Positions 22,363 to 42,625 of a DNA stretch of 64,000 nt are shown piece by piece. The notes below the pieces were generated by a model. It ran no database searches and was not told the origin of the DNA. It saw only the letters and a list, made by a program, of their open reading frames with translations. The position numbers were made by a program, and so were the translations under genes. Numbering within the stretch: position 1 is the stretch's first letter; each line of letters starts with the position of its first letter. The stretch comes from Pelomyxa schiedti (Eukaryota; Protista; Evosea): positions 310,001 through 374,000 of the forward strand of contig JAHLWZ010000790.1 in NCBI GenBank assembly GCA_020536535.1. Reading direction: 5' to 3'.

Positions 22363-25300
22363 ATGGACGGCAGCAAGGCCGGATCTTTAACAGCGACAAA
22401 CGGCAACATAAGACCAACAAACGGATACCAGTCCAACACGTCCCAGCGGTTTACGACTACAACTCCCGACGGCCAGATCTTTCCATCGTCATCGCCGATG
22501 TCGCAACAGTCGCAACAACCACAGCAACAGCAACAAGTACCTGGTACTTTGCCTTCGTTCGCTGCAGGAAATAGCGCGATGCCTTGGACCTACCAGAGCG
22601 CCAACGCGCCGGGGGACCGGCGGCACGGCGGCCCGTGGCCCCCGGGAAGCCAGCAGCAGTACGGTGGTGGCCGAGGGAGCAGGCAGCCATTCAGGGGACC
22701 GCCGCGTGAACCAGGGGGAAGCCGCAGCAGAAGGGAACCCATGGATAGGAGGGACAGGGACCGTGACCGAGCGCGAGACAGAGAGGCCGATAGGAACCGG
22801 GATCGCGACAGAGACCGAGAGCGCGAGAGGGAAAGGGACAGAGAAAGGGAACAGAAAAACAAAACCAAGGACAGCCACGACGACTCTAGGATGGCCGATA
22901 AGGGAATGCAAGCAACCAACCAGAGCGGCAACAGGCACCGGGAAGATGAAAACACCACTGGTGGACGAGACTGGCGGCCGGAAAGCGATTCTCAGCAAAG
23001 GCAGCAAAGACCCAAAGATAGAGACTGGAAAAGAGACTCGGACAGACATAACGAAAGTAACAGGACGAGAGAAAGGGATGGGGATGTAGACACCTCTAAT
23101 TTTCCAAGAGGTGGTTCTAGCAGGTGGCACTTTGTATCGTGATTATTTCCACCAATCAATATTTTTCTTCTAGGGAGCCCTATTCTTCTGGTGGAAGTTT
23201 CCCAAGCAATTATAATTCCAAGCAAGAAAGGCACTTTCCAGAAAATGAACCACACAGTGCCAATTTTCCACCAAGTCAACATTTTCAGCTGTACTCTCAG
23301 TCTGGACACAGTCAGCCTAAAACTCCTTTCAATCCAGACATTCACACTTCTATCAATACTTCTACAGAAATACTCTCTGGGCCTCTACAAAGCCAAAGAG
23401 CCACGGATGGCATTCCTAGTACTCAGAATGCACCAAGCCAGAGTGAAAGCGGGAACAATATGGCTCTGAGACAGCATACAGATTCTTTGAAACAACCACC
23501 TGTGTCTCTAAATTATGTACTGCCCCCTGCTCCTCCTATTGAAGATTTCTCGGAGGGAAATGCAATGGATGAAGATGAGGCTAGGGAAAAGCAATCCTCA
23601 GCAATACCAAATTCCTACAATCAAGCGGAAGTGTATGCTACTAAACCCTAAAAATATATATTCGCATGAAAAAAAATCCCAATTGCTTCAGAAGCAAGGG
23701 TCTTGTACCCTCTGGAATCCCGAGTACGTTGTGGCCTGGTTTACAAGATTCACATCAACAACAAAGAACTGCGGTTGTGCCAGTGGTGATGGGGTCTTCC
23801 TTTCTCCAGGAAGGGAAACAAGCCAACTCAGCCAGTTTGACTTCGACTTCTGGTTCCAAGGCACAGTCGTCTACCACACGTGATGGTTCACTTACTGAGT
23901 ACTCTTACATTTCCTCTGGTATTTTCGTTCCTGTGTTTGGCGCGCCTGACATAGAAGCAGCAAACTTGGCTTCAACTAACAAGCTTGTAACGACGAGTTC
24001 CAACACTTACCCTGCACCAACTGTTGTGAGTGCCGACTTTTATGAACCACAACATATCACCAATATTCAATTAACACAGGCACTGCAATCTGGGCCAATG
24101 CAAGGCGTTCAATCACAAGTGTTTTCAAACACTCAAGCTGAAACACAGAAAGTGCTACCTGACTCTCGATATACTCCACATTCCCATGCGCAGTATCCTG
24201 TATCTACAATGGGGATGAATATGTCTATACCTCACAGTGATACAACTCTTGGGCCCAGCTCTAACAATGGTAATTACGCAGTCAATCACTTTATGTCCAC
24301 TCTGGATGAAAGCTTGTACACAAATTATAACTTCACAGCGCTTTTTATACTCCTTACCTTCCCTCATCTATCCTTGCTGTCTGGCAAGCTTGGCTAATAA
24401 TACTAAATGCTATGAAAGGTGATATGCCATCAAATAAGAACAATGACAAGCCCAGTGATTTAACATGTACACACTCGGAGGTTTCTGACATCAACCCTAT
24501 TGGTTCGAACCCGAATCTTGGAAACACTTCTGTGAAGGGACAGGACTACCGATTTCCAGAAAATACTGGGGTAGAACAGTCAAACCACAGTCGGAGCTGG
24601 GACAACAAAGCTGATTCTTCAAAACCCGGTAACTGGGCTGAGGAGAGGATTCCGTCTCAGGCATCTGCCCATGCTACCCGTTCCGCTCATACACGTGGCA
24701 CTCATCAGCATCGGACACATTCATATGTGCACTCGCGTTCATCTCGGGCGCATATCAAGCCGCACTGGAGGCATTCAAATACTTCACCTCCAAATGTCAC
24801 CTCGTGCAGTGTCCACAATATCCAACTAGAGGAGTTTATAAAGTGCTCCAAATGTGCTGTACTAATGTGTCCGTCATGCAATAAAAAGGTTTTTATTCCT
24901 GAAAACCAAACATTATCTCAGACATAAAAGATGTGCCCTGCATGTACAAAAGACTATGGGAGCCCCCACCAAGACCTGAAAAGCAAGGAATCTCCACAAC
25001 ACAGAACCGGGCCGCAACATAATAGACCCATACCACCAAGTATTCCCTTTCCCCCAACGCAGACGGTCCAGCCACCATTCCAAGTCTCTACCCCACCAGT
25101 TGTTCCTGTTCCACAAGTACCGGCAACTCCAGTACCACATAAAGTTCCTTCTGTCAATGTGCCATCTAGTTCTGAATCTACTAGCAAATCCACCCAAAGC
25201 ATCTCACATGCAGATACACCACCAAACAGCCCCATGTCACCCCACAGCGCGGAAGCTGGCCGTTCGGCCCACGGGGAATTGGGTTCTGTCCCAGTACATA

Positions 25301-28300
25301 CTACTTCATGTACCACTATCACAAGTAGCAAGGGAGAGGAGTCCATGCTAAGTTCCTCTTCACGACCCGTCAGCAGTCAGAACTTAAGAAAGTCAAGTTT
25401 CCCGGAAAGTCAAAATACCTCCGGGGACAAACAGCTAACCACTGCAGGCGCCATTAACACCAATGTAACAAATTCTGGTGCTGATACTGTGAAAATACTT
25501 GGAAGGAAGAGTTCAAGCAGAGGTAGGACTAGAAGTAGAACAAGAAGTAGATCCAGAAGCAGAACCAGAGGAAGAAGTGCAAGCAAAAACATCCCCTCTT
25601 CCAGTAAGGGGCATAGAAGTAAAAGCAGGACAAGAAGCAGAGGGAGAAGTAGAGAAAGAGGCAAATTGAGTCGGAGAAGCAGAACCAGGAGTAGAAGCAA
25701 AAGTAACAATACCCATGGCAACAATGCAACCAAGAACAGGAGCAAAAGCAAAAGCAGTCGAAGTCGAAGTAGGACCAGGAGCAAAAGTAGAAGCAAGAGA
25801 GGGACAAATGGAAAGACCCAGGCAGAAAGTGGCAAAGTATCCAAGTTACCGCCTGACGTACCTGTAACAGGTGATGCTATCACAATTTCTTCAGACAATT
25901 CCATTCGTGGGTCCAAACCTGGGAGGAGGGAGCCAAACACTGTCAATGAAGATCTGGAAGACCAAGCTGTTAAATTCGGCGAACAGATGTTTGGTACTAA
26001 AGTCCTAAGTTCTCCATCCGCTCCATTGCAGACAATGGAGGAAGAGAATGCCTCAATGGTTTCTGTTTATCAACCAAATAGCTCTCCTATCACTGCTACT
26101 GCAGAACCTATTTCTCCATCCCCATCACCCTCCCCTCATTCACTCATCCCTCTTCCAGCAACTCTCAATGCAATGCCCCACCCACAGTTAGCAAGTCAAC
26201 CTCAACTACAATCCCAGTTCCCAGTCAAACTGTCACAAATCCCACCAGTACCTTTGCCAACAGCAACTCCAGTACCGCAGGCCCAGATAAACTCTCAGAC
26301 TCACATCCACTCGACACAAATACCGTCACAGTGTCCTGCAATGACAGAATTTCAAGCAATATCCATGTCTCCGCCACCAATATATCTGTACTTATATGTA
26401 TCTCGATCAGTGGATCCGGAGCCACCACATACTGTACGGGCTACACTTGGACAAAGTACTCTCACAGGCTTCCTGCTTGCTTTATCTTTTCTGACTGTTG
26501 CCCACAGATCTTGGACTGACACCTCCCCTGAGCGAAAGGTTACACTTCACACCAACTATATCTAGTGCAACAGTCTCGGTGTCTCCCCGAAAGTGCCCCA
26601 ACGTGACCGAGTTGGGTAACACAACAGTGCTATCAACAACCGGGCTTCCGTCTGTTGTTCCTTCTGCAGTACTGGTGCCAGTTACTCCTAAAGTCGCTCC
26701 TGGCATTCCAATTACTTCACCACATATGGATGATGCTTTAAACCACCCTCCCTCTGTCCATCCGTTGCTGCCACCAGCAAACACTAATGGTATCTCAGTA
26801 CTATGTACAGTAGTTCAATATTTATTTCTATTGGCACAGATGTTCAAGATCCACAGCAGAGTGCTCCAAAAAAAAGGCGCATAGAGACCACTCTATCGGC
26901 TGTTAGAAACCCAGTGGAATGCAGTGCTGAGAGTAGCATAGCACTGGGTTCATCATCCAGTAGCTCGGTTGTTGCCACTCAACCACTTCCATCCCTACAA
27001 GTTATTCCCCAGGCTATATCTGGTGCTCTGCCACCATGTGCTACCTCTTTCCCCCAGCAGTCAACAACAGTCAATCAGACCGCGAATAGAAAAAGATCAC
27101 GTTCCAGGGGAAAGGTGAGACCGTCAACTAGAACATCCCGGAGAACCAGAAATAAATACAGCTCAAGCAGAAGTCGGACAAGAAGTCGAAGTAGCAGCTG
27201 GCACCACAGCCATAGCAGAAGCAGAAGTAGGAGCAGGAGTAAGAGTTCCCACCATAGAACAAAAGCAAAAAATTACAGCCGTAGTCCAAGTCCACGTTCT
27301 GGTAGAGCTACTAATGCTCGACCTGGAAGAATGAACAGAAACGAAAGACGGGGCACACACACCAGCTCAGTGAGGTTGTTCATAATTTAAAGATCCATTC
27401 AATCAAACTCACTTCAAATAGTAACTCCCATATGGACACTAAAAATCCAGACCAGTCAACCCGAAACACACAATACGGCCCATTGCCAGGCTTCCAATTT
27501 AGTCAGATACCACCTCAAAATCAGCCTAGAGCGATCCCCTCACAACCCCCACAGTTTCCAGGTAATTTTTCGGGGCAGCAACCACTTCCAGCTCCACAAG
27601 TATATTCCCTACACCCAGCACCTCAACAGGCACAACTGATGCCTGCAACTCAACCACAGTCTCAACAATTGCAGGCATACCCGCAAGCGCAACAAATGCT
27701 CCTGTCACAACCCCAACTGCCGGCACAGCCACACCAGCAACCACAACCGCAACCTCCGTCACATCTGCAGCCCCAATTGTCACTGCTGTCGCAACAAAAT
27801 ACACAATCTCAAGCACTGACACTAACCCCATCACTTCGATCGCAACCACAACCACAACCGCTACAGCAGCAGCAACCGCAAAATCAACCGCTGTCACTAC
27901 CACATTCAACACTACCGCCTCAGCCTCCAACACAAACACCAGCACAGCCACAACAAGCACAACCTCAAACTCAACCGCAATCACAACCACCACCACAACT
28001 ACAGCCGCAGCCACAACCGCAACTGAAACAAGAACTGCAAGTGCAACAAGAACACGAGCAAAAACAAAAGCAACAGAAAGACCAGCAACAACTTACAGTA
28101 CAGCATACCCCCCAAACAGATCAGGTGCAAGCCCAAACCCAACCAAAATCGACAGTGTTCTCCCCTTTTCAGCTGACCCAGCCGCAAACCCAACCACCAG
28201 CAACCCCCACTGCACAGATTTCATCTCAAGTAAACCAAGTACCAGCAGTGTCACCACTTCGAGCACAATCTACCCTAACACAATCCCTTGCGCCCTCAGA

Positions 28301-29147
28301 AACCAGTGTGAGCCAGCAAGATACACAACCCCAAGTTATTGGCCAAGCGCCAGAGCACACGCCACAGGAAAAGCCAAACCCACACCGTTACATCAGTACT
28401 TCCGTCACCAGTCGAAAACCCTCTTCTCCTTTGTATTCATCCTTATCTTGTGATTTCTATACCTTAACTGATCACCTAGAGTTTCCAGTACTCCAGATGG
28501 ACGACGTGCTGAGCGCAACATAATAATAACAAAGACTACTGAAAACCGGTGTGCTATGCTATGCTTTTGTTATCACCTCCTATTCACGTAATCCCAGTAC
28601 TTCTCCACTTCTTGATAACGAGCGCTATGACATGCCTGTTGATAGGCGCCGAGCTCCGGTAAGAGTGTCAACACGTTCTTTACATCTTGTAACAGTAATA
28701 CAGGGAGAATACAGTGACCAGGGAATGCGTTGGAGTGCACAGCAACCATTCAGGCATAACGCAAATCAGTGGCAACAACAACAAACGGTTAACGTCCAAC
28801 AACCACAAGAATACAACAATGGTTGGGTGTCACACGTTCCCGTACAGCACCAGTCACAGGCCCCACGTAACCAGCAGTGGCACAAACGCACCAAGTCACT
28901 GCACAACGCACACAGCGTACAGCAACAAGACCAGGACTACACTGAGGCCCAGTACTTCGTCCCCCACCCGTACAACAGCGAAGTCTACTACGAAGACCAG
29001 CAACCCCAACAGCAACAACCACCCAACACCTACAGCTCCAACCACAACAGTCACACCCACAGCAGCAACACCAACAATAATACCGGAGCGGGAGGCCGTA
29101 GGCGGTTCACACCCAACCAAGGGCACCCAAGGGGCAACAGGAGGTGA
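22363..29147 (+). CDS. Very large (~2000 aa) intrinsically disordered protein with RD/RE, RS/RT, P/Q-rich blocks and one small Cys/His cluster; could be two genes
   Basis: Nine consecutive + strand ORFs can be joined by short introns. The junctions near 24330-24420 and 27370-27455 are the least certain. The only folded-looking motif is CSVHNIQLEEFIKCSKCAVLMCPSCNKKMCPAC (~24805-24945). Confidence 0.65.
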
Positions 29148-29481
29148 AGCAAATGAACGACGCAAGCCCGGTACCAATCGCTCTTTTGGTTGCTCTGCCT
29201 GTACTATCATATCAAAGCGTGGTGGATTTTCTCTCAATGAGAAATAAAAAAATACAAAAATCAAGATACAAACCCAAATTTGTTTTGGGCGGAAAATGGA
29301 TCGTCAAACGCACTAATTTACGGAACAAACAAGCAGAGAAACGGACTAAAACCGTATTCGCCCACGTTGAACAGTAATCTCCAGAACAAAAAGAAGCGTG
29401 GAGCAGACCAGTGCTACGACGAAACAAAAACGGTGTAGAGTAACAACCACAAAGGGTGACCTTTTAGTGAATTTAGCCTTC

Positions 29482-32400
29482 ATGAGGCAATCTCTGTTAA
29501 TCTTAGGTCAGTTAATTCCTCCCCTCTTGCCATTTCTCAGGGTGCTGACACAAAAAAGTGGTGGCGATATGGTCACTTGGATGCGAGGGCGGTGGGATCA
29601 TCTACTCTTCGACAGCAGCATCGACTTATGGGACAGAGGAAACCACTATCACGGGGCAGTCACTTTTGCCGCCCAGTGGATGGACTAGCAGGGGTGTTTC
29701 AATCAACATGCTGCCGTGCTCAATTCGCTCGTGGAACAACACTGTAATTATTTGCGTGGCTCCGGCGGGCGTAGGTGCCAACTTACCCTTGTTGGTCACT
29801 TACAATGGGAATAACTTGGTGGCCCCTCAGTCTAATTTCTCCTACAGACGTAAGATTATGTCTTGGGCTTTTTTTTTTTCTTTTCTTTCTATTCCCTTCC
29901 TCTCGCACTATTCTCTTCGTTATGTGTTGTCTCTTCTTTTTCTTCTTATTCAAATTGTACTGATTCAGTTTTAATGGGTTTTTCCTCAGCACCCATCATA
30001 TGGGAAGCTTCTAGTGCACCCACAAGTGGAGGTTCGGTTTATATCTGGGGATCGAATATCGGCTCTGAGTCAACATCAGTTCTAGTTCTCATAAATGGGA
30101 AAGAGTGCACAGGTGCAACCGTGGTTGATTACTCTACTATTACTTGTAAGGCACCAGAGGGCACTGGCCGCGGACTCCCAATTACTGTAGAGGTACCAAA
30201 AGCTTCAGTTTATAGCCAAACTACCACCACTTATGCATTTTGGTATGAAGGTGAGCAGAAATGCAAAGCCTTTTAATGCTTCTTACATTGCACAACATAG
30301 CACCAACTCTGGAATACACTAGTTCTGCACCAACACATGGATATTCACCTATTGTTATTTATGGGACCAATTTTGGTTCTGGTGCCGACGGTCTTGTTGT
30401 AACAATTCAAGGTCAACTGTGCACCTCACCTATTGCTTACCACACCAAAATAACATGCTATCCACCTCCTGGTGCTGGTCGCTGCTTAACTTTGTCTATT
30501 GATGTAAATGGACAGGGCTGCTCCCGTGCATGCTTCTTCTATTATGATGGTATGTAGACACAGATCCAAAAAAGCAAGTAACATGCAACAGCACCATTGA
30601 TTTGGTCCAATGATCCTCCACCTACCAGTGGTGGGCCCACTACCATTTATGGGCAAAACTTAGGCACCACCAATACTTCTGTACAAGTGTATATGGGGGA
30701 TTACTTCTGTGAGAGTCCTGTGGTAAACAGAAATGGGACAGAAATTCGGTGCATTGCCCCACCAGGCACTGGTAGACTTGGCTGGGTTTTTGTAATGGTG
30801 CCAAGCGATGAGAACTATATCCAATACGCATCAAACTGGATTTTTACTTATCAAGGTACACAAATTGCAAGATTTTCTTGTGTTCATTTTATGGTTTCTT
30901 AGCACCTACCATTGACAATATCACCTCTGCTGATACTGATGGGAAAGAAAGTTTCCGGATTTATGGAACCAACTTTGGGGCAAAAGGGAGCTATGTGGAC
31001 GTTGCAATATCTGGCCAATGGTGCAGACTTGCATCTGTGATAGTTGACGACACAGTCATAGAAGCTTGGCCACCAGCAGGTTGTGGATCGGACTTGTGGT
31101 TATACGTCAATATTCCCTCCACTATTGAGGGATACAGCCAAGGCATCAGTCATTTTTTTGATTACAATCGTATTTCTTCTATCCATCCAAACTTTTTACC
31201 AAGAAAAACCTCCAGCACCATCGATTTCTGCTGTAACTGAAGCTTCAACAAATGGTCATGAAATAACCAACATCACTGGGAAAAATTTATGTGCATCATC
31301 CAGACTTGTCTCTGTAACAATTGGAGGTCATTCTTGTGTAGATGTTGTAGCTGTGAGCCATTATCTGGTTCGATGTTATCCTTTCCCTGGTGTAAGTGGA
31401 CCTCATGAGCTTATTTTAAGTGCGAGTGGCCAACTTGGTTACGCCAATTTTTCCTTTCAAGGTATCCCTTCTTGTTTTTCCTTCCTTAGCCAATATAATA
31501 TAAAAAGCCCCTGCAATTATCTCCGCAGTTGGTTACCAGGGGTCAAGTTACACAGGGATTATTAATGGTGTAAATTTTGGCCCAGAGGATACTATTGCCA
31601 AGGTAAAAGTGGGTGGTCTAGACTGCATCAATGCCACAGTTACAATTGCTCATACTCAAATAATGTGTTTCCTGCCACCTGGTGAGGGTGATCATGTTAC
31701 AGTAGAAGTTTTCGTCTCTGATGGGGTGCATGGATCTACCACCTCAGCCGATGTTTTTGAATATAATGGTCCCTTTCCCCTTTCCTTTCTGAAACTCAAA
31801 CCCAAACAAGGGATGGCAATAATTTCAGCCTCAACTGTTGACGCAACACTTTATCAATCTACCTCTGTTTTGGGAACAAATTTCAATTTCATTGGGGCAA
31901 TATCTGTGGTCATTGATGGATACATTGCCTGTAATAATGCAACACTTGTGAACTCAACAGTTGTAACATGCACTCCAAGCATTGGTTATGGCAAGAACCT
32001 TCCCATTTGTATAACAATTGGATCTCATCTAGCTTGTGCTTCTGTTTTTTCCTATGCATGTAAGCTCATTTTTTTCCAAAGTTAAACCCCTAATTGCCTT
32101 GGAGCACCCAAGATATATGGTGTTGTTGGATGCAACACAACTGGAGGTTGTAACTTCGTACTTCTCTGTTGCTAACTTGTTTTAGGCAAGATAAACATAA
32201 CTGGGAAAAACTTTGGCCCCAGTGCCAAAGTTCTTGTAAATGGAATTGAGTGTAACGAGACTAGAGTAGAGGCCAGTACTTTCATTACTTGTGTTGCCCC
32301 ACCTGGTTCAGGCAGAGTTCCTCTTGTGGTTATCACACCTATTTCGGACTTTCATTCGCAATCTGTGGCATCGTACATGTGCTACAACAGTACTCCTCTT

Positions 32401-35400
32401 ACTTCATTTTCTCACTAATGAAATTCAACAGAACCTATCCTCCTAGAAGCTACTAGTGTAGCTACAGACGGCAGAGAGGCAACTTTTATTACAGGTTCCA
32501 ATTTTGGTGTCAATGGAACTGTGGATGTCACAATAAGTGGCGTTGCCTGCAAAGAAGCGAAGATTACCGTTCCTCACACGCAAATCTCTTGTATCCCACC
32601 TCCTGGTGTTGGGACTTGGAAGCTTCTCAATGTATCTACATCTTCTATTTGCTCGAGTTCAGCAGCAGCAGCCATCTTCTTCTATTCATGTTATTCCTGA
32701 TTCCTGGCTTAGTTGCATCACTTATACAAGCAAATAGGCCCAGTAATAATATCTGCCACTAACTACGGAGACTTTATTGTCATCACTGGGCTTAATTTTG
32801 GCCCCTTTGGCACAGATGTAACAATCACAATTTACAAAGGATTATGCTTCAACGGGACCATAGAAACACCACATACCAGAGTGAGGTGCATCCCGGACAC
32901 TGTCCCTGAAGATAGAACATCTCTTACTGTAAGGGTAGCTGATCCTATAACATTAAATTTTTGTGAAGTCTCAAAAGTTGTTATTTTCCAAGGTTAGTGA
33001 GGGTTTATTTGTTGTCACTCTTTTATACCCTTTCAGGGCCCCTCATACAGAGCACTTCAACGCCACCGACAGACTGCAACAACAGCTGGCTTGTTATTAA
33101 TGGGGAAAACTTTGGACCAAACACTACTCAAGTAGAAGTGTACATAGCAGAATATTCTTGCATGGATGCTTCCATTCTCGAACCCTACAAACGAATCAAG
33201 TGCAGGCCACCATGTGGTGCTGGTTCTGAACTACCTCTTGAAGTCCGTATAAATGCTGATGGTTCCCACACCTATTCCGTGCGTGCCAATTTCAGCTATG
33301 ACAGTATGCAGGCTCATTTTCTAATTGTACTAAGTTTTTCTAGGTCCGACTGTATTTGATGCAACACCTGTTCCGACTTCTGGTGGCTGGACAATAATTA
33401 CTGGAGAAAATTTTGGTCCGATTAATTCCACCGTTTCCGTGTGGATTGGTGGAAGAACGTGCTTAAATGCCGAAGTAGTTGTAAATCATACTCATATCCG
33501 TTGCCTTGTCCCAGCTGGAACAGGAGCTAATAGTACCGTTTTCGTCACAGCGTTAAGCTTCAACACTGGGAGACCCACTACTGGGAAAAATACCTCTGTT
33601 TTTTCTTATCTAGGTAGTCGCTAGCAACGCAATGGTCTTACTCACATAGGATAGCACCACAGATTACTTCTGCAACTTCTGTCAACACAGATAACACGCA
33701 CGCTGTAAGTACAATAAGTGGAAGCAATTTTGGACCTATTGGAACTGAGGTGAGGGTAAAAATTGCAGATCAGCCTTGTACAAATGCAATTGTTCTTAAT
33801 CATACTACTATTACCTGTGTTCCCCCACCAGGGGTGGGTGTCTCCCTTCCAGTCCAAGTTATCATTATAAGTACCACTGGGGGTGATTCCTCTTTCAATT
33901 CCAGCAATGTTTTTTCCTATAACAGTAGATCCCTCAAGCACATATTTCCTCACTTATACCATGCCCAGTTCCCACCCTGAGCCAGGCAACATCAATAAAT
34001 ACATATGATCTCGCTGCGACTATCATTACAGGCACTAATTTTGGGCCAGCCTCCCTCAGCCATGTAGAAGTATGGGTGGGTTCCCAAATTTGTGCCGCTG
34101 CAAGTATTATACAAGACCACACCAAGATAGCTTGCTACCCCCCAGCTGGAACGGGGAAACAAATCAACGTTACTCTTAGCATATCACGAGTCGGAAGTGG
34201 CAAGCCTGTCACTGTCAACAAAGCAATTTTTTCCTACACTGGTAAAAATTTGTCAAGGGATTACAGGATCATCTAATACCATTTAAGCACCCCAAATTAT
34301 GCTTGTTACTAGTACAACCACAGCTGTTTCTGGGAACATTACAATTTATGGGACCAACTTTGGACCTTCAGCAGCAAATGGGGGAGTATATGTCGAGATA
34401 AAAGGATCAGAATGCACATCACCTGTCATGAAAGTCCCCCACTTTCAAATTGAATGCACACCTCCCCCGGGTGCTGGTGGTAATCTCCCTGTGATTGTTT
34501 ATGTGCCAGGAAAGTCCGTCACCAACCCTGTCCCGCAGTTGGCCTATGGCTCTTTCTCCTATTCAGGTTCTCCCCTCATATGTTTGACAAGCAATAACGC
34601 AGCACAGCACCAGAAATTTTTCTTGTTACTGAGGCTGCGACCAGTGGTGAAGAGTCCATATCTATTACAGTTTCACTCCCTTTACCTATATATCTTATGG
34701 CTTATCTATCTTAGGGAGCAAACTTCGGCCCAAATGGCACGGATGCTACTGTTACTATTGACGGGGTTATCTGCTCCGACGTGAAAGTGAAAAATCATAC
34801 AATTATTGAGTGCCTCCCTCCACCAGGTTATGGTCAAGGGCACCGTTTGGTTGTGCATATTCCAGCTGATGAAAGCTTCTCTCAATCTGCTCAGTATCTA
34901 AACTTTATTTACCAAGGTTCTCTTGTCAGTGTGCCATTTTTTCAGCTGACTTGAATACAGCTCCCCAAGTTTTTACAGCCACACCTTCAAATACAGAAGG
35001 AGGATACATCACAACCATCAAAGGAAAAAATTTTGGTGATAGCACCCAAGTTAATATCTCTGTAACCATCAGCTTATGTAATGTGCCTATGGCCTGCACA
35101 AATGCCACAACTACAATACCTCATAAAGAAATAACCTGTTTCTCCCCCCCGGGGACTGGGACTTCAAACCTTGTAAGTGTATGGGTTCCAGCAGGAACTT
35201 CCCAAGTTGGATCTAGCTTTGTGTTTGACTATAATCGTAAGTATTCTTCTCATTTCTTTTCTCATTTTAAACTCTATAGCCCCGGAGATAACGGATGTCC
35301 CACTGTGTTCCACATCTATCAGTTCAGTATTCCTATCGGTTTTTTCCTTTCCCATAAACCCAACACATGAATTAACTAACCTAAAAAAGGGAAAAAACTT

Positions 35401-37797
35401 TGGGCCTGGTGCATCCAAAGGTGACTCCTATGCAATTATGTATATTCTCGACAATTCTACCCAACTTATATATGCTGCTGGTTACGTAAATCATACCACC
35501 CTGCAAATATACATTCCTGATGGGTCTGGTGCAAATCATACAATTTCTGTACCCTCCACCACACAATCCTTTTATTTGACTAAATACAGGTTAAAGTGAA
35601 AGACCAGATGTCAAATATTTTCAATTACAGCTATTACGGTTTGTAACTTTTTACAAAATTTCCAAAGTTAATATCCCCTAGGTCCTGAAGTCTCATCCGC
35701 AAGTGCCGTTGATACTTCCGGTAACCAACAGACTGTAATTTCTGGAAAAAACATGGGGCCAGTAGGCACAGAGCTTCAAGTTACAATTAATGGCCAACTG
35801 TGCGCAAGGCCATCAGTTACAGAAGCCCACACCACGATTGCCTGTACTCCTCCAGTTGGTGCAGGAGCAAATCTTACACTGAACCTTTCTGTGGGTGGTC
35901 AATCTTCCTTCTGGAAATATTTCAGCTATAATAGTGCGTGCCTTACCCCTCCATTCACGACTCACTATGAATAGGCCCAACTGTAAGTTATATAACGTTG
36001 GCTCCCACCAGTGGCCTTTCCCCAATACAAATCACTGGGACAAATTTTGGTCCAAATAATACACACTTGAGTGTCACCATTGATGAGGGTAGTGTTCCTT
36101 TGACCTGTCAAAATCCACGAGTCATTGAACCCCATACCACAATTTCGTGTTGGCCTCCAGTGGGTGTTGGAGCTCTAAAGACACTTCGTGTCAGTGTATG
36201 GGTGGACGGAAGTCAACCTCTTTCTACATTTGGGGTGTTCTCCTATCTTGGTAACTATTTCTATTCTCTTCACTATTCTCAAAGCCACTAGCCCCAGTTA
36301 TTCACTCTGTTACACAGTCCAGCACGGCTGGCCTGGATCTGATTACAATTGTTGGTGACAACTTTGGTCCCCTTGGTACAAATATTACAGTAACTGTCGG
36401 AGAGAACTCATGTGCCAATGCAAGTGTTATTGTCAATCATACACACATAACATGTTTATCCCCTCCTGGAACTGGAAAAGAACTACCAATTTGTGTTTAT
36501 ATCGCTAACCAGATTGGGTGTGGAAGTTTCTCATACTTTGGTATTCTTAAACTATTTACCAAAGTGATAATGTTTCACTTAGGCCCCTCAATAACTGGTG
36601 CCACACCCACTCCTACAAGTGGTACATTCGACACAATAATCAATGGAACCAACTTCGGCACAAGCAATGAAATAAGTGTCTATATAAATGGACTTCCTTG
36701 TATAAATGTGGCTGTTTCCATCCCGCACCTACAAATTTCATGTACCACACCCCCTGGCAGTGGGAAAAACCTCACCTTAGAGTTGTACATCCCAAGTCGA
36801 GCAAGTATTTACTCACAGAAAACCTCATCTGTGTTCTCATACTTCGGTTTCTTCCTCCCTTTTGCTACCCTGTGCTAAATTTCTCACTCAGCTCCAATTG
36901 TTGTATCCGCGACTTCAACTCTCACTGACGGGACCACCCCAACAACGATATTTGGGTCAAATTTTGGTCCTAACGGAGGAAGTTTGGCAGTGAGAATTGG
37001 CGGGAAGGAATGCTCCAATGCACAGATACTTGATGATAGCAACATAAAATGTTATCCACCACCAGGAGTTGGAAAGAACAATCTGGTTGAAGTCGATATT
37101 CCAGCCACATCCAGATATATGCAATCTACCTCTGCTTTGGTTTTCTCGTACTACGGTACTAGTTATTATCCCTTTATGATACTTACTCTTTTCCCCTCCC
37201 TTTTGAAGCTCCTACTTTCTCTTCCTCCACTCCAATTGCCACCGATGGAAGTGCAACGCTGTACATTTTTGGGACTGGCTTTGGACCACAGGATACTATT
37301 GTTTCAGTAACAATAAATAATGAAACTGAGTGCTCAGGGCCTATCGTTTCCTCCGCACATGGGGTAATTACTTGTACACCCGGGGCAGGAGTTGGAAGGA
37401 ACAAGTTAATCACAATCTTTGTACCAGCCAAGGGCATGCCGTCTACACAATCTGTGAGTGGCTATTTTTCGTATACTGGTAAGTTTATCACATCTTTGTG
37501 CAACTACTTATCCACTTGAATGTAGAACCTACTGTAATATCGTCCACACCAGCCAATACAGATGCTACCTCTTATACAATAATTACGGGCACAAACTTCG
37601 GCCCTTCTGGAACTACTGTTGGTGTAACAATATCAGGACAACAATGCACGAATGCAACAGTTGCCGTTCCTCACACACAAATCAAATGTTTACCACCTCC
37701 TGGAGTTGGGGCAAATAACACTCTCAAAGTCATCATCCCCAATCCTGATGGACAAGTGGCTTATTCTCAGTTGTTTTCTTATAACGGTCTGGTTCCG

Positions 37798-37828
<31 letters not shown>

Positions 37829-40800
37829 GCACTCAAGGCCCAGTTATCCACAGTATTCCAACTCCACCAACGTCGGGGAATCTGACAATAATATCGGTAT
37901 ATCTCTAATGAGTGTATAACAAAGCCCAACATTTATTTTCAGGGGGCAAACTTTGGGCCAGGAGGAATGAATTATGGAATTGGATATAGGATTGACAATG
38001 GATCTCTAATCTCAGCCACATGGCTTAGTCAAACACACCTCCTTATCCCATTCCCCGCTTCATCAGGAAGCTTCCACACTCTGCAGGTTGTGGTTCGAGA
38101 CTTGCAGTCTGCTGTGGTTTCTTTTAGCTATGCTGGTATAGTATTAACTAACTTTTTCCTTTATTGACAACTCCAAGCTCCTAGTATAATTTCCGCAACT
38201 CCAGCTACTACTGACGGTCTCACCCAAACTATTATCACTGGCGTCAATTTTGGTCCGCTCGGAACTCCTGTTCTTGTTACAATCGAGTCCCAGGGAGTGC
38301 CTGTTGTCTGTTCAAATGCCTCTGTGTCTGTACCACATGTACAGATAACATGCATTCCACCACAAGGAACCGGACAGTCTCATGCTGTAAATCTCGAAGT
38401 TCCACTTGGTACTGGAGCACAATTTTGTTCTGCAAATGTGTTCTCCTATTCAGGTTTTGATCTTTTTTTATGCAAAAAAACAAAAAAAACAAAAAGAAAC
38501 ACTCTCTAATATCTTTCCTGTTTGTTTACATAACAGCTCCAGTAGTGTTATCAGCATCATCAGTTTCCCATTCTGGTGGAGAGACAACTATAAGAGGTAC
38601 AATTACCCTCTTTGTATCTGTTTTAACGTTCAAAGGTGCAAACTTTGGGCAAAACCCTTCTCTTGTCTCCGTCACAATAAACAAGAAAACCTGCAAATCG
38701 CCCACCATTAAAACAGCTCATACTATATTAACATGCCAAGCCCCAGCTGGAAGTGGGTCTTCTCTTGACGTTGTTGTCCTTGTTGATGGCCTGTACTCTG
38801 AGGAGTACCCTGTCTTTGATTATATACAATCTGGGCTCTCAAAGGGTGGGATTGCTGGAATCTCTGTGGCTAGTATATGTGGAGCTGCTGCTCTCTGTGC
38901 CGCCGCTGCCGCTTTTCTTGTTTTCAAGTTTTTCACTTTCCTCCACGCTCTTAATGTTAATATTGTAAAGGCGCAAGAAGGCGGATGCAGAATCCGAAGT
39001 ATCCATGAATTCGTTGCTGCCGGACAACGGGGCATCTGTTGCGTTTGAAGATACCTTCAATATTCCAGACTCAAGGTTGGCTAATATTGAGCCATTGTTT
39101 AACACTATACAGGAATGTGATTCTGAGTGATTTCATTCTTGCGGTGTGAAATCTCATTTTCAAATTAGGGTAACGTCTTTCAGACTTCTGTGTCAACATT
39201 GACTTTTGGCCTGGAATCGCGTCAAGCGGAAGTTGACCAAGTGCTGGAAGAAACCTTGACACTTCACAATGCGACAAAGAAGACAGTTTCATTCAAGTTC
39301 TTTGCACCACGATCATACAAGTACAAGATTGCTTTTGAGCCAGAAGCTGGGGTGATAGATGCGGTTCGTTTTAATACTTGGTACTGTCTCCTGGATCCTT
39401 CTTACTTCATGTAGTCTTATGAGCAAGAGATTACTATAAAGGCTATCATACTGTGTACAACAAGAGTTACTTCCCACGTTACTTTAGCTGCCAACTCAGG
39501 TTATTCCCAAATTTGATTGGAATTGATACTGAAATGTCTACAGGGCATGATTTTGCGAAGGGAGATGTGCAGCACTCCAAAATTGACTTCCACATTGAAT
39601 CGGCTCTTTCTGGTAAGCTAGACCCTGAGGAGATTTCTTTGTCACGTCCTGCTATTGGTAATGCACTGGTAACTACCCCTTTGTGACTGAAAGCATATAG
39701 GTGAAGGGTCTTATGGTTTTGTATATAAAGGTACAAGATTGCTGAATTGCAAGATCTAACAGTACTTTAGGTGATTGGCGAGGCCAACTTGTTGCAGTGA
39801 AGGTATCAACAACGTTTTCTTGTATCTCCATTGTGACATCAAAATAGATTTTAAAGTGCCAGGAATCAACAACCACTGCTATTCGAGAAGATTTCTTAAA
39901 AGAGGTTTGCTTGTTTGCCAAGTGGGTGCCAATTTAATGTTGTGAAGGTGAAAATTATGGAGTCATTCCGCTGTCCACAGGTATTTTGGGGTAAGCCATC
40001 TTTAGTATAACCAACCAAACAAAACAGATTGTCAATTTTGTTGGCGCTGTGTATGTCCCGTCAAAGCTTGCTATTGTTACAGTTTGTTACACTAATTGCA
40101 ATGCTCAAGTAATTACTGACAAACAAGGAATTTATGCCATTTGGCAGTCTCGCTACTCTACTACGCACACAAAGGCTTACAGCTGTTCAAAAAATCAAAA
40201 TGATGCAAGACGCAGCACGTGGGATGAATTTTTTGCATAAGGTGTGCAATTGCAATTGGGTTTTGTAACCTTCCTCACCCTCCCTCAGAGTGGCATACTT
40301 CACAGGTATCAGTTAGCCTCTGGTTTCACTAATACGACAAAGAGATTTAAAACTTGACAATGTTCTGGTTTCCTCTTTGGACCCTGCCTGCGCAGTGTGT
40401 GCTAAAATATCTGACTTTGGCACTACCCGAACAGTGCAAGCAGAGAAAGATGCACTCCAAATGACTCAGGGGATAGGGTACCACTCAAGTGATTCATTTT
40501 GAATGACTTATTTGAACAGAACTCCCGCGTATATGAGCCCAGAAATTTTGAGAAACAGTGACTACAGCTCTTCATCAGATGTGTATAGGTGAGTTCACTT
40601 TGTATACACACTTTCTCACTGAGAACAAAGCTTTGGCGTTCTTCTTTATGCTGTCTTCACGGAGCAAGGTTTCCTCCTCTTACTTTATTTTCTTTTTTTA
40701 CTGGGAAATAGATCCCTATAGTGGTGCAGAATTCGCCACAGCATGGAGTATGTTTGAATTCATGTAGGACAATTCAATCTGACATTTTTGCAGAATTGGC

Positions 40801-40993
40801 TGAATTTGTCATATCAGGGAAAAGGATGGTGATTCCTAGTACAGTTCCAAAAGTGGTGTCTGATTTGATGACAACATGCTGGGACCAAGAGCCCTTGGCA
40901 CGGCCAAGTAATATATATATATTTTATGCTTGACACTCACAGCTCACAGGTTTTGCCGATGTTGTAACAATTTTGGAGCAAATGAAATTATAA
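29482..40993 (+). CDS. Receptor-type TKL (tyrosine-kinase-like) kinase: signal peptide, 29 IPT/TIG repeats, TM, juxtamembrane Ig/MSP-like domain, kinase
   Basis: Signal peptide MRQSLLILVVAIWSLGCEG; 29 repeats of xP.I....P.T.G....I.G.NFG....V.I....C.......I.C..PPG.G....V......FSY; TM GIAGISVASICGAAALCAAAAAFLVF-KRKK; kinase GEGSYGFVYKGDWRGQLVAVK, LHRDLKLDN, KISDFG, GTPAYMSPE, SDVYSFG, CWDQEPLARP. Confidence 0.93.
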
Positions 40994-41084: not shown

Positions 41085-42625
41085 TCAAGAATCGTTTTTC
41101 TGAACATCCTCAACTTGAATCTATGGGGGAGTAAGAAGTGTAGGCCAGATTTGGGTCGCACAGTTTGATTTGTTGTCAGGCCACAATGTTGAAGTGTGCC
41201 TACACGTAGCTCACGAAGTTTTAGCCCAAAAGCCACAGTCCAAAGAGTAACTGAGTCTACTGGTACATTGATCTTTTCACACAGAAGTTTCTTACCAGAG
41301 AGTTAGCGAGTCACAGAGTGCTAAAGAGGAAACCTTCAAATCCGCTACAGAGGCATTTCCACTCATTTTCAGGGTGTGGGCGGTCGTCCCATAGACCAAA
41401 TTTAGTCTAAGAGGCCTCAATTCGAGCTTTCCGCCACAGCGATGCCGTAAAATTCGTGGTCCTCCCCCGTACCTGTCCAAAGTTCAATAGGAGGCATGCA
41501 CGACTGTCAGTAAAATATTTCTGCAAACCAGTTCCAAAGGAGTTGCCACGCCTTCAATGTGATATCTTCATATTTGTCAGAAATCCTTTCCTGCAATTGC
41601 ACATCATTATCGCCAAAGTCACCAGCACCACCTGGGACAACGAGAGTTGAGTTGTCAATTTGGCCTGGAGGATGTGGATTTGTCTGGAACTCCCGCAACC
41701 ATTTTTTGTTTATGAGGCAGAACACTCCATCTGAATTTCTGATGTCTGCCAGTGACACACTCTCCCTTTGTTTAACAATGGGTGGTAGTCTGTCTAACCA
41801 ACAAATGAACTGTAAGCAATAGCCAGGTAGAATAGTCAATTGACTATGTACACCAACTCTGGAGTGATGCCCACACATCAAAGCAACATGCCTGTTATTC
41901 TCCCTTTCAAATCAACTATGCTTTTAGTGCAAGGCCCCAAGGAAAGAGTAGATTTGTATTAAAAACGGGCCACCCACCATTCATCGAAATTCCTTTGCTC
42001 GGTTGTGTCAATGTCACGAGACGAAGGGACACTCTCGAATGATGGGTCTTCCCACGTGCGGTACTGCCAATTCCGCCACAACATGCTGTCCTTATATCGG
42101 AGAAACCGTTTGTGCAAATTGTGGGAAGGCGGCGATGAGAGGCCGACGTGGCTGATGAAAAAACACTTCCCGTTTTAAGGTGAAACTTTAAGGCGTGGTC
42201 GGTTACAAAGGGAAAAAAAAAGGCAGGACACATGGACGTTACACACATCTTTGCAGAGCAGCAGGCCATAAACGACAACAATGTACTTGGGTTGATGTAC
42301 ATCCCCTTCTTCTTAGATGTTTCTTGTAGAAGTGCTTCCACTGCAACGCGGCCAACCCCAGATGGGCATCACACACAAACGGAATTTACGTGTGTCTAAA
42401 CTGTGCGGGGCTCCATCGGGCACTGGGGGTGCATATCTCCCACATCAAGTAAGAGACATCCGTCAGCAAATTTGTTGTTGACTGTTCCCCCCAACTTCGT
42501 GCCACTAGGTCACTGACACTGGATACATGGAAACCTGCTGAAGTTCAGACAATGCAACATGCCGGGAATGCTGTATTCCGGCGATACCTGATGGATCACG
42601 GCGTCATGGACATGTCACCGAACAT
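41085..42625 (-). CDS. DUSP-domain plus C-terminal ubiquitin-like domain protein; N-terminal exons unresolved
   Basis: FCLINKKWLREF..PPGQIDNSTL..DKYEDITLKAWQLLWNW.YGGGPRILR is a DUSP signature. LNLVYG..HTLKMSGNASVADLKKLLCEKINVPVDSVTLW..TLQHCGLTTNQTIQVE is UBL-like. The start is approximate. Confidence 0.6.

What the first reader, a model, noticed from the sequence alone, without database searches (positions are those of the whole stretch)
29482..40993. Giant receptor kinase built from 29 interchangeable phase-1 IPT/TIG exon cassettes
Seen in sequence: by manual count there are 29 IPT/TIG repeats. All 28 junction introns fall at the same point (after F-S-Y-x, before x-P) and all are phase 1, as is the intron after the signal-peptide exon. 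Each ~250-280-nt module can therefore be skipped, duplicated or swapped without a frameshift. The repeats are strongly diverged and fall into loop classes: short V..GQ loops versus long IP...SYSQ loops. Established: tandem IPT/TIG ectodomains underlie Dictyostelium TgrB1/TgrC1 kin recognition, which have no kinase domain, and Entamoeba has large TM-kinase families with different, Cys-rich ectodomains. Inference: a candidate variable-length, polymorphic recognition receptor (self/non-self, prey or symbiont sensing) wired directly to a TKL kinase and diversifiable by exon skipping or unequal crossover.
Basis: partly seen in the sequence, partly recalled or inferred. Interest (0 to 1): 0.82.

Follow-up and report, generated by a model that had tools for sequence, protein, structure and literature searches.

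The report
Giant 29-IPT receptor kinase of Pelomyxa
This is a real gene of the anaerobic amoeba Pelomyxa schiedti for a very long cell-surface-type receptor kinase with 29 Ig-like IPT/TIG domains, almost one per exon; the exon pattern looks like an old trace of how the array grew, and nothing found here shows that the cell shuffles the domains today.

Summary
On the + strand, 29482-40993 encodes a 54-exon, 3,014-aa type I receptor: signal peptide, 29 IPT/TIG repeats, one TM helix, a cytoplasmic ASH/MSP-like beta-sandwich and a catalytically complete TKL kinase. All 28 inter-repeat introns, and the signal-peptide intron, are phase 1 at the same point (after F-S-Y-x).

Corrections:
- Five repeats (R9, R17, R19, R27, R29) carry extra internal introns, four of them phase 0. 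Only 24 modules are single symmetric exons.
- The organism is Pelomyxa schiedti. The gene is in GenBank as KAH3758301.1, but that model is probably a chimera with the upstream RS/Q-rich gene.
- At least eight more P. schiedti paralogs (about 10-34 IPTs) and four Mastigella homologues share the architecture. Two mapped paralogs follow the same intron rule. The scan noted one on another piece (s1-378000).

The diversification reading is not supported:
- Repeats are anciently diverged (mean 32%, maximum 51% identity), with no neighbour similarity.
- No DNA tract could serve unequal crossover.
- Mastigella isoforms show no cassette differences.
- RNA contigs confirm kinase-end splicing but do not cover the ectodomain, so skipping stays untested.

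The closest characterised relative by architecture is Dictyostelium VSK3/DrkC. The cytoplasmic ASH-kinase part is shared with Entamoeba kinases annotated only as protein kinases. I rate it a new variant of a known kind, of moderate interest.

The parts
29482..29506 (+). Exon 1: start codon and first 8 residues of the signal peptide (MRQSLLIL|VVAIWSLGCEG), followed by the phase-1 intron 29507-29558
   Evidence: First ATG after an in-frame stop at 29368-29370. The hydrophobic N-terminus was read directly. The GenBank model skips it.
29559..29849 (+). IPT repeat R1 (divergent), plus the end of the signal peptide
   Evidence: Pfam TIG E=1.2e-9; HMM hit.
29990..32059 (+). IPT repeats R2-R8, one exon each: 29990-30250, 30301-30549, 30592-30855, 30903-31169, 31216-31461, 31508-31768, 31811-32059. 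All flanking introns are phase 1.
32105..32389 (+). IPT repeat R9, two exons (32105-32149, 32186-32389) split by a 36-nt phase-1 intron
   Evidence: The 45-nt exon restores the A-strand PKIYGVV..GG. The GenBank model omits it.
32432..34566 (+). IPT repeats R10-R16, one exon each: 32432-32689, 32738-32992, 33037-33303, 33344-33613, 33655-33924, 33969-34241, 34288-34566
34608..34916 (+). IPT repeat R17, two exons split by the phase-0 intron 34670-34714, just before G-A-N-F-G
34961..35236 (+). IPT repeat R18, single exon
35280..35638 (+). IPT repeat R19: Cys-poor 'type B' module in three exons (35280-35338, 35390-35548, 35590-35638), with two phase-0 internal introns
   Evidence: My first model had an 8-nt micro-exon here. 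I replaced it with the annotated exons because HTISVKVKDQMSNIFNYSYY parallels R27 HTLQVVVRDLQSAVVSFSYA.
35682..37786 (+). IPT repeats R20-R26, one exon each: 35682-35933, 35975-36250, 36292-36540, 36583-36846, 36892-37155, 37209-37478, 37526-37786
37838..38135 (+). IPT repeat R27: Cys-less 'type B' module in two exons split by the phase-0 intron 37897-37942
   Evidence: The same subtype, with an A-T-W motif and a phase-0 intron at offset about 20, recurs in paralogues P0002 and P0004.
38178..38453 (+). IPT repeat R28, single exon
38537..38843 (+). IPT repeat R29 (membrane-proximal), split by the phase-1 intron 38597-38635. The intron sits at the same position in the last repeat of both mapped paralogues.
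38844..38927 (+). Transmembrane helix (GGIAGISVASICGAAALCAAAAAFLVF), followed by K-RKK after the phase-2 intron 38928-38970
   Evidence: The phase-2 intron position is conserved in P0004 and P0002.
39113..39620 (+). Cytoplasmic ASH/MSP (PapD-like) beta-sandwich, in exons 39113-39143, 39184-39363, 39415-39499 and 39544-39657 (first part)
   Evidence: AlphaFold2 model with mean pLDDT 95. Foldseek matches OCRL1 ASH, CEP192 PapD-like and VAP MSP domains, all at probability 1.00. Pfam Motile_Sperm scores above its cut-off in paralogue P0158. Intron 39500-39543 is confirmed by an RNA contig.
39621..40993 (+). TKL-type protein kinase domain in 14 small exons, with GEGSYG, VAVK, HRDLKLDN, DFG, SPE and CW..P..RPSF; stop TAA at 40991-40993
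   Evidence: Pfam PK_Tyr_Ser-Thr E=2e-62 on P0001:4230-4705. RNA contigs confirm introns 40242-40288, 40306-40342 (flanking the 17-nt exon 40289-40305), 40478-40519, 40589-40630, 40669-40711 and 40748-40793. Exons 39848-39904 and 39948-39980 were fixed by homology.

Best explanation
This is a genuine, transcribed gene of Pelomyxa schiedti (Archamoebae) for a type I receptor kinase. Its parts, in order, are a signal peptide, a roughly 2,540-aa ectodomain of 29 IPT/TIG Ig-like domains (49 N-glycosylation sequons), one TM helix, a cytoplasmic ASH/MSP-like domain and an active TKL kinase. About 24 of the 29 IPT domains keep a conserved Cys pair. The gene belongs to a family found in Pelomyxa and Mastigella. 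That family grafts IPT arrays of about 10-34 modules onto a TM-ASH-kinase tail that is also found in Entamoeba kinases and in a Dictyostelium kinase. The one-repeat-per-exon, all-phase-1 structure is a historical footprint: the array grew long ago by tandem duplication of an 'exon plus phase-1 intron' unit, starting from two module types (type A, and type B with a phase-0 intron). It has since diverged to saturation. Today it is most likely a fixed, elongated stalk or binding rod rather than a shuffled cassette set. Inferred mechanism: a multivalent ligand or particle (prey, a symbiont surface or the substrate) clusters the receptors at the plasma or phagosomal membrane. Clustering leads to trans-activation of the kinase. 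The ASH/MSP module would couple this to membrane-traffic partners, as for Dictyostelium VSK3 in phagosome maturation. Shown: the gene structure, the domains, the family, 3'-end transcription and splicing, and the antiquity of the repeats. Inferred: the ligand, the localisation, the activation mode and the role of the ASH module.
For: Gene model and phases. TIG domains: with plexin and MET IPT matches. Kinase: and motifs read. RNA junctions in the kinase half. Organism and paralogues sharing the tail over its full length (E from 1e-80 to 1e-135). Same intron rule, and conserved juxtamembrane introns, in P0004 and P0002. By contrast, the 28-IPT receptor tyrosine kinase of Planoprotostelium has only 29 introns at scattered positions and phases, with many repeats per exon. 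The 1-1 pattern is therefore a lineage-specific duplication footprint and not a property of IPT arrays. Old repeats: mean identity 32%, no lag effect, no collinearity with paralogues, no long DNA repeats. ASH/MSP fold. The tail aligns with Entamoeba and Dictyostelium kinases including the ASH module. VSK3 precedent: PMC2064856, PMC1420674.
Against: No RNA coverage exists for the ectodomain, so its 35 introns are not verified by transcripts, and alternative isoforms cannot be excluded. Two RNA-library contigs are unspliced (38932-39087 and 39445-39631). They may be pre-mRNA or DNA carry-over, and they leave introns 38928-38970 and 39076-39112 resting on paralogue conservation only. High divergence between repeats would also result from fast diversifying evolution, not only from age. 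No second isolate or sister species was available to tell these apart. The ligand, localisation and function of the ASH module are inference by analogy.
Confidence: 0.6

Rival explanations
1. This is a variable-length, polymorphic recognition receptor (self/non-self, prey or symbiont). Its symmetric phase-1 IPT exons are actively used for diversification by in-frame exon skipping and by unequal crossover.
For: 24 modules are single 1-1 exons, and all 28 junctions are in phase. Family members differ widely in repeat number, about 10 to 34, so repeat number has changed over evolutionary time. The last loops are length-variable. P. schiedti lives with obligate prokaryotic endosymbionts (PMC10579272), so a symbiont- or prey-sensing need is plausible.
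Against: There are no recent duplicates, no neighbour similarity, and no DNA homology long enough for unequal crossover. Five modules contain extra introns, four of them phase 0. Isoforms of two Mastigella homologues show no cassette differences. Uniform phase follows automatically from tandem duplication. No polymorphism data exist.
Confidence: 0.15
2. This is mainly a structural adhesion or glycocalyx-spanning rod. The IPT array acts as a spacer or substrate adhesin, and the kinase only reports mechanical load or attachment, with no specific ligand recognition.
For: 29 tandem Ig-like domains, mostly with a conserved Cys pair, and 49 N-glycosylation sequons suit a stiff, extended, glycosylated rod. 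Giant IPT-only proteins without a kinase are common in free-living protists: Protostelium (54 matched IPT stretches), Entosiphon, Fabomonas, and P. schiedti's own 'zymogen granule membrane glycoprotein' models.
Against: A complete, apparently active kinase and a conserved ASH module are kept in every paralogue. The sequence data cannot separate adhesion from sensing.
Confidence: 0.17
3. The deposited 4,705-aa model (KAH3758301.1) is correct. The receptor part is the C-terminal two thirds of a fusion with an N-terminal RD/RS- and Q-rich region, and it has no signal peptide.
For: It is the annotated GenBank product, and it maps exactly onto 22741-40993 with GT..AG introns.
Against: The join needs a 740-nt intron (28952-29691), whereas all 53 introns of the receptor model are 36-140 nt. 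That intron would delete a canonical ATG-plus-signal-peptide exon and the first third of IPT-1. Read on, the upstream frame reaches its own stop at 29145-29147. Several paralogues start with a signal peptide directly. An RS-rich, nuclear-type region is topologically incompatible with a type I ectodomain.
Confidence: 0.05
4. It is a decaying pseudogene or an assembly artefact of repeats.
For: The assembly is single-cell and amplified. Public contigs break at the poly-T tract 37786-37834.
Against: The 9,045-nt spliced frame is open across 54 exons, all kinase motifs are intact, RNA contigs are spliced, two DNA runs reproduce the sequence without differences, and the repeats are too diverged to mis-assemble.
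Confidence: 0.03

Closest known systems
Dictyostelium discoideum VSK3 (= rk3 / DrkC), DRK family of TKL receptor kinases
   Same: Amoebozoan type I protein with a signal peptide, an extracellular or lumenal TIG domain, a single TM helix and a C-terminal HRDLxxxN TKL kinase. It has a characterised function in phagosome maturation on late endosomes and lysosomes (PMC1420674, PMC2064856).
   Different: VSK3 has one TIG domain, not 29. The D. discoideum TIG-kinase P0223 aligns with the window protein only over the kinase (35% identity), not over the ASH/MSP module. Orthology is therefore not shown.
Entamoeba proteins annotated only as protein kinases (P0175, P0179, P0181, P0186; that these belong to the transmembrane-kinase, TMK, family is my inference from memory, not checked here) and Dictyostelium DDB_G0278879
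   Same: The cytoplasmic ASH/MSP-like module plus TKL kinase is homologous, at 32-38% identity over about 380 aa including the module.
   Different: Their ectodomains carry no TIG match in the precomputed Pfam lists: some show PF07699 or PF03302, others none. Here the ectodomain is a pure IPT array. I did not check the TM helices of these Entamoeba proteins.
P. schiedti paralogues (KAH3765385.1, KAH3746093.1, KAH3766163.1, KAH3767653.1, KAH3756150.1, KAH3760936.1, KAH3742724.1, KAH3764321.1) and Mastigella eilhardi homologues
   Same: Same full architecture and the same intron rule: phase 1 after F-S-Y-x, a phase-0 intron in type-B repeats, and conserved juxtamembrane introns.
   Different: Repeat number is about 10-34. 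Some paralogues have an extra 170-230-aa Cys-containing N-terminal region. Repeats are not collinear with those of the window gene.
Planoprotostelium fungivorum PRP82680.1 ('receptor protein-tyrosine kinase', 4,467 aa)
   Same: A giant amoebozoan receptor with about 28 IPT domains and a C-terminal kinase.
   Different: Its kinase is TK-like (HRDLAARN), has no ASH module and matches over the kinase only. It has only 29 introns at scattered positions and phases, with many repeats per exon. The combination probably arose independently.
Metazoan MET/RON receptor tyrosine kinases and plexins
   Same: The IPT profile of the 29 repeats matches plexin-A1/A2 and MET IPT domains in the PDB. IPT domains form the membrane-proximal stalk of a signalling receptor.
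   Different: There is no Sema or PSI domain: IPT-1 follows the signal peptide directly. There are 29 IPTs rather than 3-6. The kinase is TKL, not TK.
Dictyostelium TgrB1/TgrC1 allorecognition proteins
   Same: Tandem IPT/TIG ectodomains on an amoebozoan surface protein (established knowledge; bioRxiv 10.1101/2025.08.01.668227).
   Different: Tgr proteins have no kinase. The only Pfam Ig_TgrO1 hit here is sub-threshold (E=0.049, 14.3 bits against a cut-off of 27.9). No polymorphism is shown for the Pelomyxa gene.

Membership tests
IPT/TIG domain (Pfam PF01833) | Sequence match to the TIG profile above the gathering score | tested here: met
   27 of 29 repeats match at E<=0.01, best 1.4e-12. 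The profile of the 29 repeats hits plexin and MET IPT chains in the PDB.
Eukaryotic protein kinase, TKL-like | Complete catalytic core: G-loop, VAIK Lys, alpha-C Glu, HRDLKxxN, DFG, APE-like motif | tested here: met
   GEGSYG, VAVK, FLKEV, HRDLKLDN, DFG and SPE are all present. PK_Tyr_Ser-Thr E=2e-62. Substrate specificity (Ser/Thr versus Tyr) cannot be tested here.
Type I single-pass receptor | N-terminal signal peptide and one TM helix between the ectodomain and the kinase | tested here: met
   MRQSLLILVVAIWSLGCEG at the first ATG, and a 27-residue hydrophobic helix followed by KRKK. No dedicated predictor was available. The 5' end is not verified by RNA.
Archamoebae / Entamoeba-type receptor kinase tail | Homologous ASH/MSP-like module plus TKL kinase C-terminal to the TM helix | tested here: met
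   Alignments to E. marina, E. invadens and E. histolytica proteins span residues 86-475 of the 476-aa tail. The module alone finds them at E from 5e-13 to 4e-4.
   The ectodomain consists only of IPT repeats from residue about 20 to the TM helix. No other domain fits between them.
Dictyostelium DRK/VSK family | Orthology of the kinase to DrkA-D, beyond shared architecture | tested here: inconclusive
   The architecture matches VSK3, but the D. discoideum TIG-kinase P0223 matches over the kinase only at 35% identity. No phylogeny was made.
Tgr allorecognition family | Tgr-type Ig/IPT profile match, and extreme allelic polymorphism | tested here: not met
   Ig_TgrO1 scores only 14.3 bits against a cut-off of 27.9, in one repeat. 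Polymorphism could not be tested, because only one individual was sequenced.
MET/plexin-type receptors | Sema domain and PSI domains N-terminal to the IPT stalk | tested here: not met
   IPT-1 begins about 20 residues after the signal peptide, and the whole ectodomain is tiled by the 29 repeats.
Class 1-1 symmetric module exons (exon-shuffling type) | One domain per exon, flanked by phase-1 introns on both sides | tested here: met
   27 ectodomain exons are 1-1, and 24 of the 29 repeats are single 1-1 exons. Five repeats have extra introns. Actual shuffling or skipping is not shown.

The most novel reading that the evidence does not exclude
The Pelomyxa/Mastigella IPT-array kinases could form a Dscam-like or Tgr-like recognition system in an amoeba that houses obligate endosymbionts. 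In-frame skipping or mutually exclusive use of the symmetric phase-1 IPT exons, or allelic variation in repeat number, would generate receptor diversity for telling prey, symbionts or kin apart. The signal would pass directly through a TKL kinase and an ASH/MSP trafficking adaptor at the phagosome or symbiosome.
Probability: 0.07. Interest if true: 0.85.

Novelty: new variant of a known kind. Interest (0 to 1): 0.45.

Why it matters
TIG-plus-TKL receptor kinases are known in Amoebozoa from a single-TIG example (VSK3). IPT stalks are also known from MET and plexins.

Four things appear undescribed in the literature I could search:

1. A family in Pelomyxa and Mastigella that scales this design up to about 10-34 IPT domains.
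2. A strict one-domain-per-exon, phase-1 organisation outside animals. From memory, 1-1 modules are usually treated as a hallmark of metazoan exon shuffling. Here the pattern documents array growth by exon-plus-intron duplication in a protist.
3. Two ancient IPT module types interspersed along the arrays.
4. A cytoplasmic ASH/MSP-like domain conserved between the TM helix and the kinase across Archamoebae, including Entamoeba, and in Dictyostelium. This hints at a link between these receptor kinases and vesicle traffic.

Practically, the GenBank entry for this gene appears to be a chimera and needs correction. Pelomyxa is not genetically tractable, so functional follow-up will be hard. The homologous Entamoeba and Dictyostelium tails are testable.

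Tried and rejected
1. Two automatic splice-chain models. The first retained introns. The second over-split the gene and invented micro-exons. An 8-nt exon at 35631-35638 and a 10-nt exon at 39981-39990 survived into my first manual model. I rejected both after comparison with paralogues and the GenBank model.

2. RNA evidence for cassette skipping. The only RNA runs are single-cell libraries with depth only downstream of about 38900. The ectodomain has zero depth, so nothing can be said.

3. Recent duplication or concerted evolution. I looked at pairwise identities, a lag analysis, best hits to 183 paralogue repeats and a DNA repeat search. All were negative.

4. Isoform comparison in Mastigella. 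Differences lie only in the kinase tail, from retained introns or truncations.

5. A Tgr relationship. There is only one sub-threshold Pfam hit.

6. Literature on Archamoebae IPT kinases, or on an MSP domain in Entamoeba TMKs. Nothing was found in the held library. The P. schiedti and M. balamuthi genome papers do not discuss these genes.

7. I considered an AlphaFold model of a repeat pair and dropped it, because the tool returns no inter-domain geometry.

Full report
**What is there**

The region has about 43% G+C and is cut by very short GT..AG introns. Three-frame ORF listing showed a long series of IPT-like peptides on the + strand, ending in kinase motifs. I built an HMM from 13 clean exons. 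It finds exactly 29 repeats between 29597 and 38790, and nothing significant elsewhere in the window.

For each junction I listed every frame-compatible GT..AG intron and built a curated model. I then corrected it against homologues. The final model has these features:

- ATG at 29482 and TAA at 40991-40993
- 54 exons, and 53 introns of 36-140 nt (median 44)
- 3,014 aa with no internal stop
- intron phases: 37 phase 1, 11 phase 0, 5 phase 2

In the ectodomain 31 of 35 introns are phase 1. In the cytoplasmic part the counts are 7, 6 and 5 for phases 0, 1 and 2.

**Check of the observation**

All 28 inter-repeat introns are phase 1. They lie after the last strand (consensus F-S-Y-x) and before x-P. 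The signal-peptide intron 29507-29558 is also phase 1. 25 of the 28 junction introns are identical in the independently produced GenBank model. Pfam TIG matches 27 of 29 repeats. The repeat profile finds plexin and MET IPT domains in the PDB. The count, the position and the phase are therefore confirmed.

Five repeats are not single exons:

| Repeat | Extra intron(s) | Phase |
|---|---|---|
| R9 | 32150-32185 | 1 |
| R17 | 34670-34714 | 0 |
| R19 | 35339-35389 and 35549-35589 | 0 and 0 |
| R27 | 37897-37942 | 0 |
| R29 | 38597-38635 | 1 |

24 repeats are single symmetric 1-1 exons.

**Transcript evidence**

Two single-cell RNA libraries hold parts of the 3' half. Their contigs confirm these introns:

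- 39500-39543
- 40242-40288 and 40306-40342, which flank a 17-nt exon
- 40478-40519, 40589-40630, 40669-40711 and 40748-40793

Two contigs are unspliced (38932-39087 and 39445-39631). They may be pre-mRNA or DNA carry-over. Depth over the whole IPT region is zero, so exon skipping could not be examined.

**Identity and annotation**

A search of 1.84 billion representative proteins with repeat R26 returned many giant IPT proteins. Fourteen of the 150 share the window's C-terminal 453 aa. Cluster look-ups name them as Pelomyxa schiedti proteins and Mastigella eilhardi transcripts.

The window's own product is KAH3758301.1, 4,705 aa. Mapped onto the window, it starts at 22741 in an RD/RS- and Q-rich gene. 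It reaches the receptor through a 740-nt intron (28952-29691) that skips the ATG and signal-peptide exon and the first part of IPT-1. No intron of my receptor model exceeds 140 nt. The upstream frame, read on, has its own stop at 29145-29147. Several paralogues begin with a signal peptide. I therefore treat the fusion as an annotation chimera.

The deposited model also deletes parts of R5, R6, R8/R9 and R14, which my model keeps as complete domains. In the other direction, the annotation corrected my R19 and two kinase exons.

**The family**

P. schiedti has at least eight further IPT-array kinases. By my HMM they carry about 34, 33, 20, 11, 11, 10, 10 and 10 repeats. It also has relatives with the same tail but other ectodomains, such as LRR. 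Mastigamoeba has a relative with pentraxin and laminin-G domains.

Exact exon maps of P0004 (locus L001) and P0002 (locus L002) show the same rule:

- a phase-1 intron after F-S-Y-x at nearly every junction
- a phase-0 intron before G-x-x-F-G in a subset of repeats
- a phase-1 intron inside the last repeat
- the same phase 2, 2, 0, 0, 1 series in the juxtamembrane part, which supports the window introns that have no RNA support

The repeats with the phase-0 intron form a distinct, often Cys-less subtype with an A-T-W motif. This subtype is present in all three genes.

The 28-IPT receptor tyrosine kinase of Planoprotostelium has only 29 introns at scattered positions and phases, with many repeats per exon. 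The 1-1 pattern is thus a lineage-specific legacy of duplicating an exon-plus-intron unit. It is not a general property of IPT arrays.

**Is it being diversified?**

- Pairwise identity among the 29 repeats averages 32%, with a maximum of 51%. It is the same at lags 1 to 7.
- Each repeat's best match among 183 paralogue repeats is also only 35-55%, and there is no collinearity.
- The longest DNA similarity inside the array is 70 nt at 64-76% identity. The rest are 20-40-nt motif matches.
- Trinity isoforms of two Mastigella homologues differ only in the kinase tail.

So there is no recent duplication, no gene conversion, no substrate for unequal crossover, and no observed cassette isoform. Repeat number has clearly changed between paralogues, but long ago. 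Polymorphism could not be tested, because both DNA runs come from the sample that gave the assembly.

**The cytoplasmic part**

After the TM helix (38844-38927) and a linker of about 55 aa comes a 130-aa module. AlphaFold2, run on a 33-sequence family alignment, folds it with a mean pLDDT of 95. Foldseek places it with OCRL1 ASH, CEP192 PapD-like and VAP/MSP domains. Pfam Motile_Sperm passes its threshold in one paralogue.

The kinase has all catalytic motifs. The module plus the kinase aligns with proteins of E. marina, E. invadens and E. histolytica, and with Dictyostelium DDB_G0278879. The Dictyostelium TIG-kinase of VSK3 type and the Planoprotostelium protein match over the kinase only.

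**Comparison with what is known**

- Goldberg et al. 2006 describe Dictyostelium rk3 as a TKL receptor kinase with an extracellular TIG domain (PMC1420674).
- Fang et al. 2007 show that this protein, VSK3, sits on late endosomes and lysosomes with the TIG domain in the lumen, and that it is needed for phagosome-lysosome fusion (PMC2064856).
- The P. schiedti genome and symbiosis papers (PMC8887013, PMC10579272) and the Mastigamoeba genome paper (PMC8136499) do not discuss these genes.
- Searches for Archamoebae TIG kinases, or for an MSP domain in Entamoeba TMKs, found nothing.

**Verdict**

The architecture-level interpretation is right. The 'interchangeable cassette, polymorphic recognition' reading is untested, and the available evidence leans against it.

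Best reading, at about 0.6: an ancient, now static, 29-IPT rod on a receptor kinase with an ASH-kinase tail like that of Entamoeba kinases. It probably senses particles or surfaces at the plasma or phagosomal membrane.

Novelty: a new variant of a known kind. The gene is already in GenBank but mis-modelled, and the family is undescribed in the searchable literature. The scan noted a paralogue on another piece of this genome (s1-378000).

Noticed in passing
window 22741-29147 (+) and 28952-29691: GenBank protein KAH3758301.1 fuses an upstream RD/RS- and Q-rich gene with a Cys-rich zinc-finger-like stretch to the receptor, through a 740-nt intron. Read on, the upstream gene has its own stop at 29145-29147. 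This is a probable chimeric annotation.
   Followed up: partly
window 39113-39620; also P0175, P0181, P0186 (Entamoeba) and P0192 (Dictyostelium): A cytoplasmic ASH/MSP (PapD-like) domain lies between the TM helix and the kinase (pLDDT 95). It matches OCRL1 ASH, CEP192 and VAP MSP folds. It is conserved in Archamoebae receptor kinases, including Entamoeba proteins, and I found no literature on it.
   Followed up: partly
window 40289-40305: A 17-nt micro-exon (AGTGGCATACTTCACAG, encoding SGILH of the HRD region) is flanked by 47- and 37-nt introns. An RNA contig confirms it directly.
   Followed up: yes
window R19 (35280-35638) and R27 (37838-38135); L001 and L002 paralogue repeats: A second IPT module type recurs every 4-10 repeats in all three mapped genes. 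It has a phase-0 intron before G-x-N-F-G and an A-T-W motif, and it usually lacks the Cys pair. The arrays appear to be built from two ancient module kinds.
   Followed up: partly
window 37786-37834 and 38470-38507: A long poly-T tract lies inside intron 37787-37837, and an A-rich tract inside intron 38454-38536. Public contigs of both DNA runs break at the first one. These are likely weak points of the single-cell assembly.
   Followed up: no
window 41120-41162 (-): An RNA contig joins 41120 to 41162 with CT..AC ends, that is, a 41-nt GT..AG intron of a minus-strand gene. That gene starts about 130 nt beyond the receptor's stop codon (convergent neighbours).
   Followed up: no
all 53 donor sites, 29507-40908: Donor sites are relaxed. 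Only 20 of 53 have +5G, 37 of 53 have -1G, and 9 lack both (for example atc|GTATTT, tct|GTACCC, caa|GTTTTT). This agrees with the scan's separate note on this stretch.
   Followed up: partly
L001 1386-9349 (-) and 10001-24081 (+); P0013/P0003: IPT-only gene models ('zymogen granule membrane glycoprotein') sit next to IPT-kinase genes. KAH3746092.1 lies head-to-head with KAH3746093.1. KAH3766164.1 lies on the same contig as KAH3766163.1, and the latter model starts inside an IPT repeat. Some of these may be split or truncated models of even longer receptors.
   Followed up: no
PDB 21nr_A: The best solved-structure match of the repeat profile is an entry called 'TLP-IPT' (344 aa, four IPT stretches, E=1.7e-21), ahead of the plexins. 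I could not identify it.
   Followed up: no
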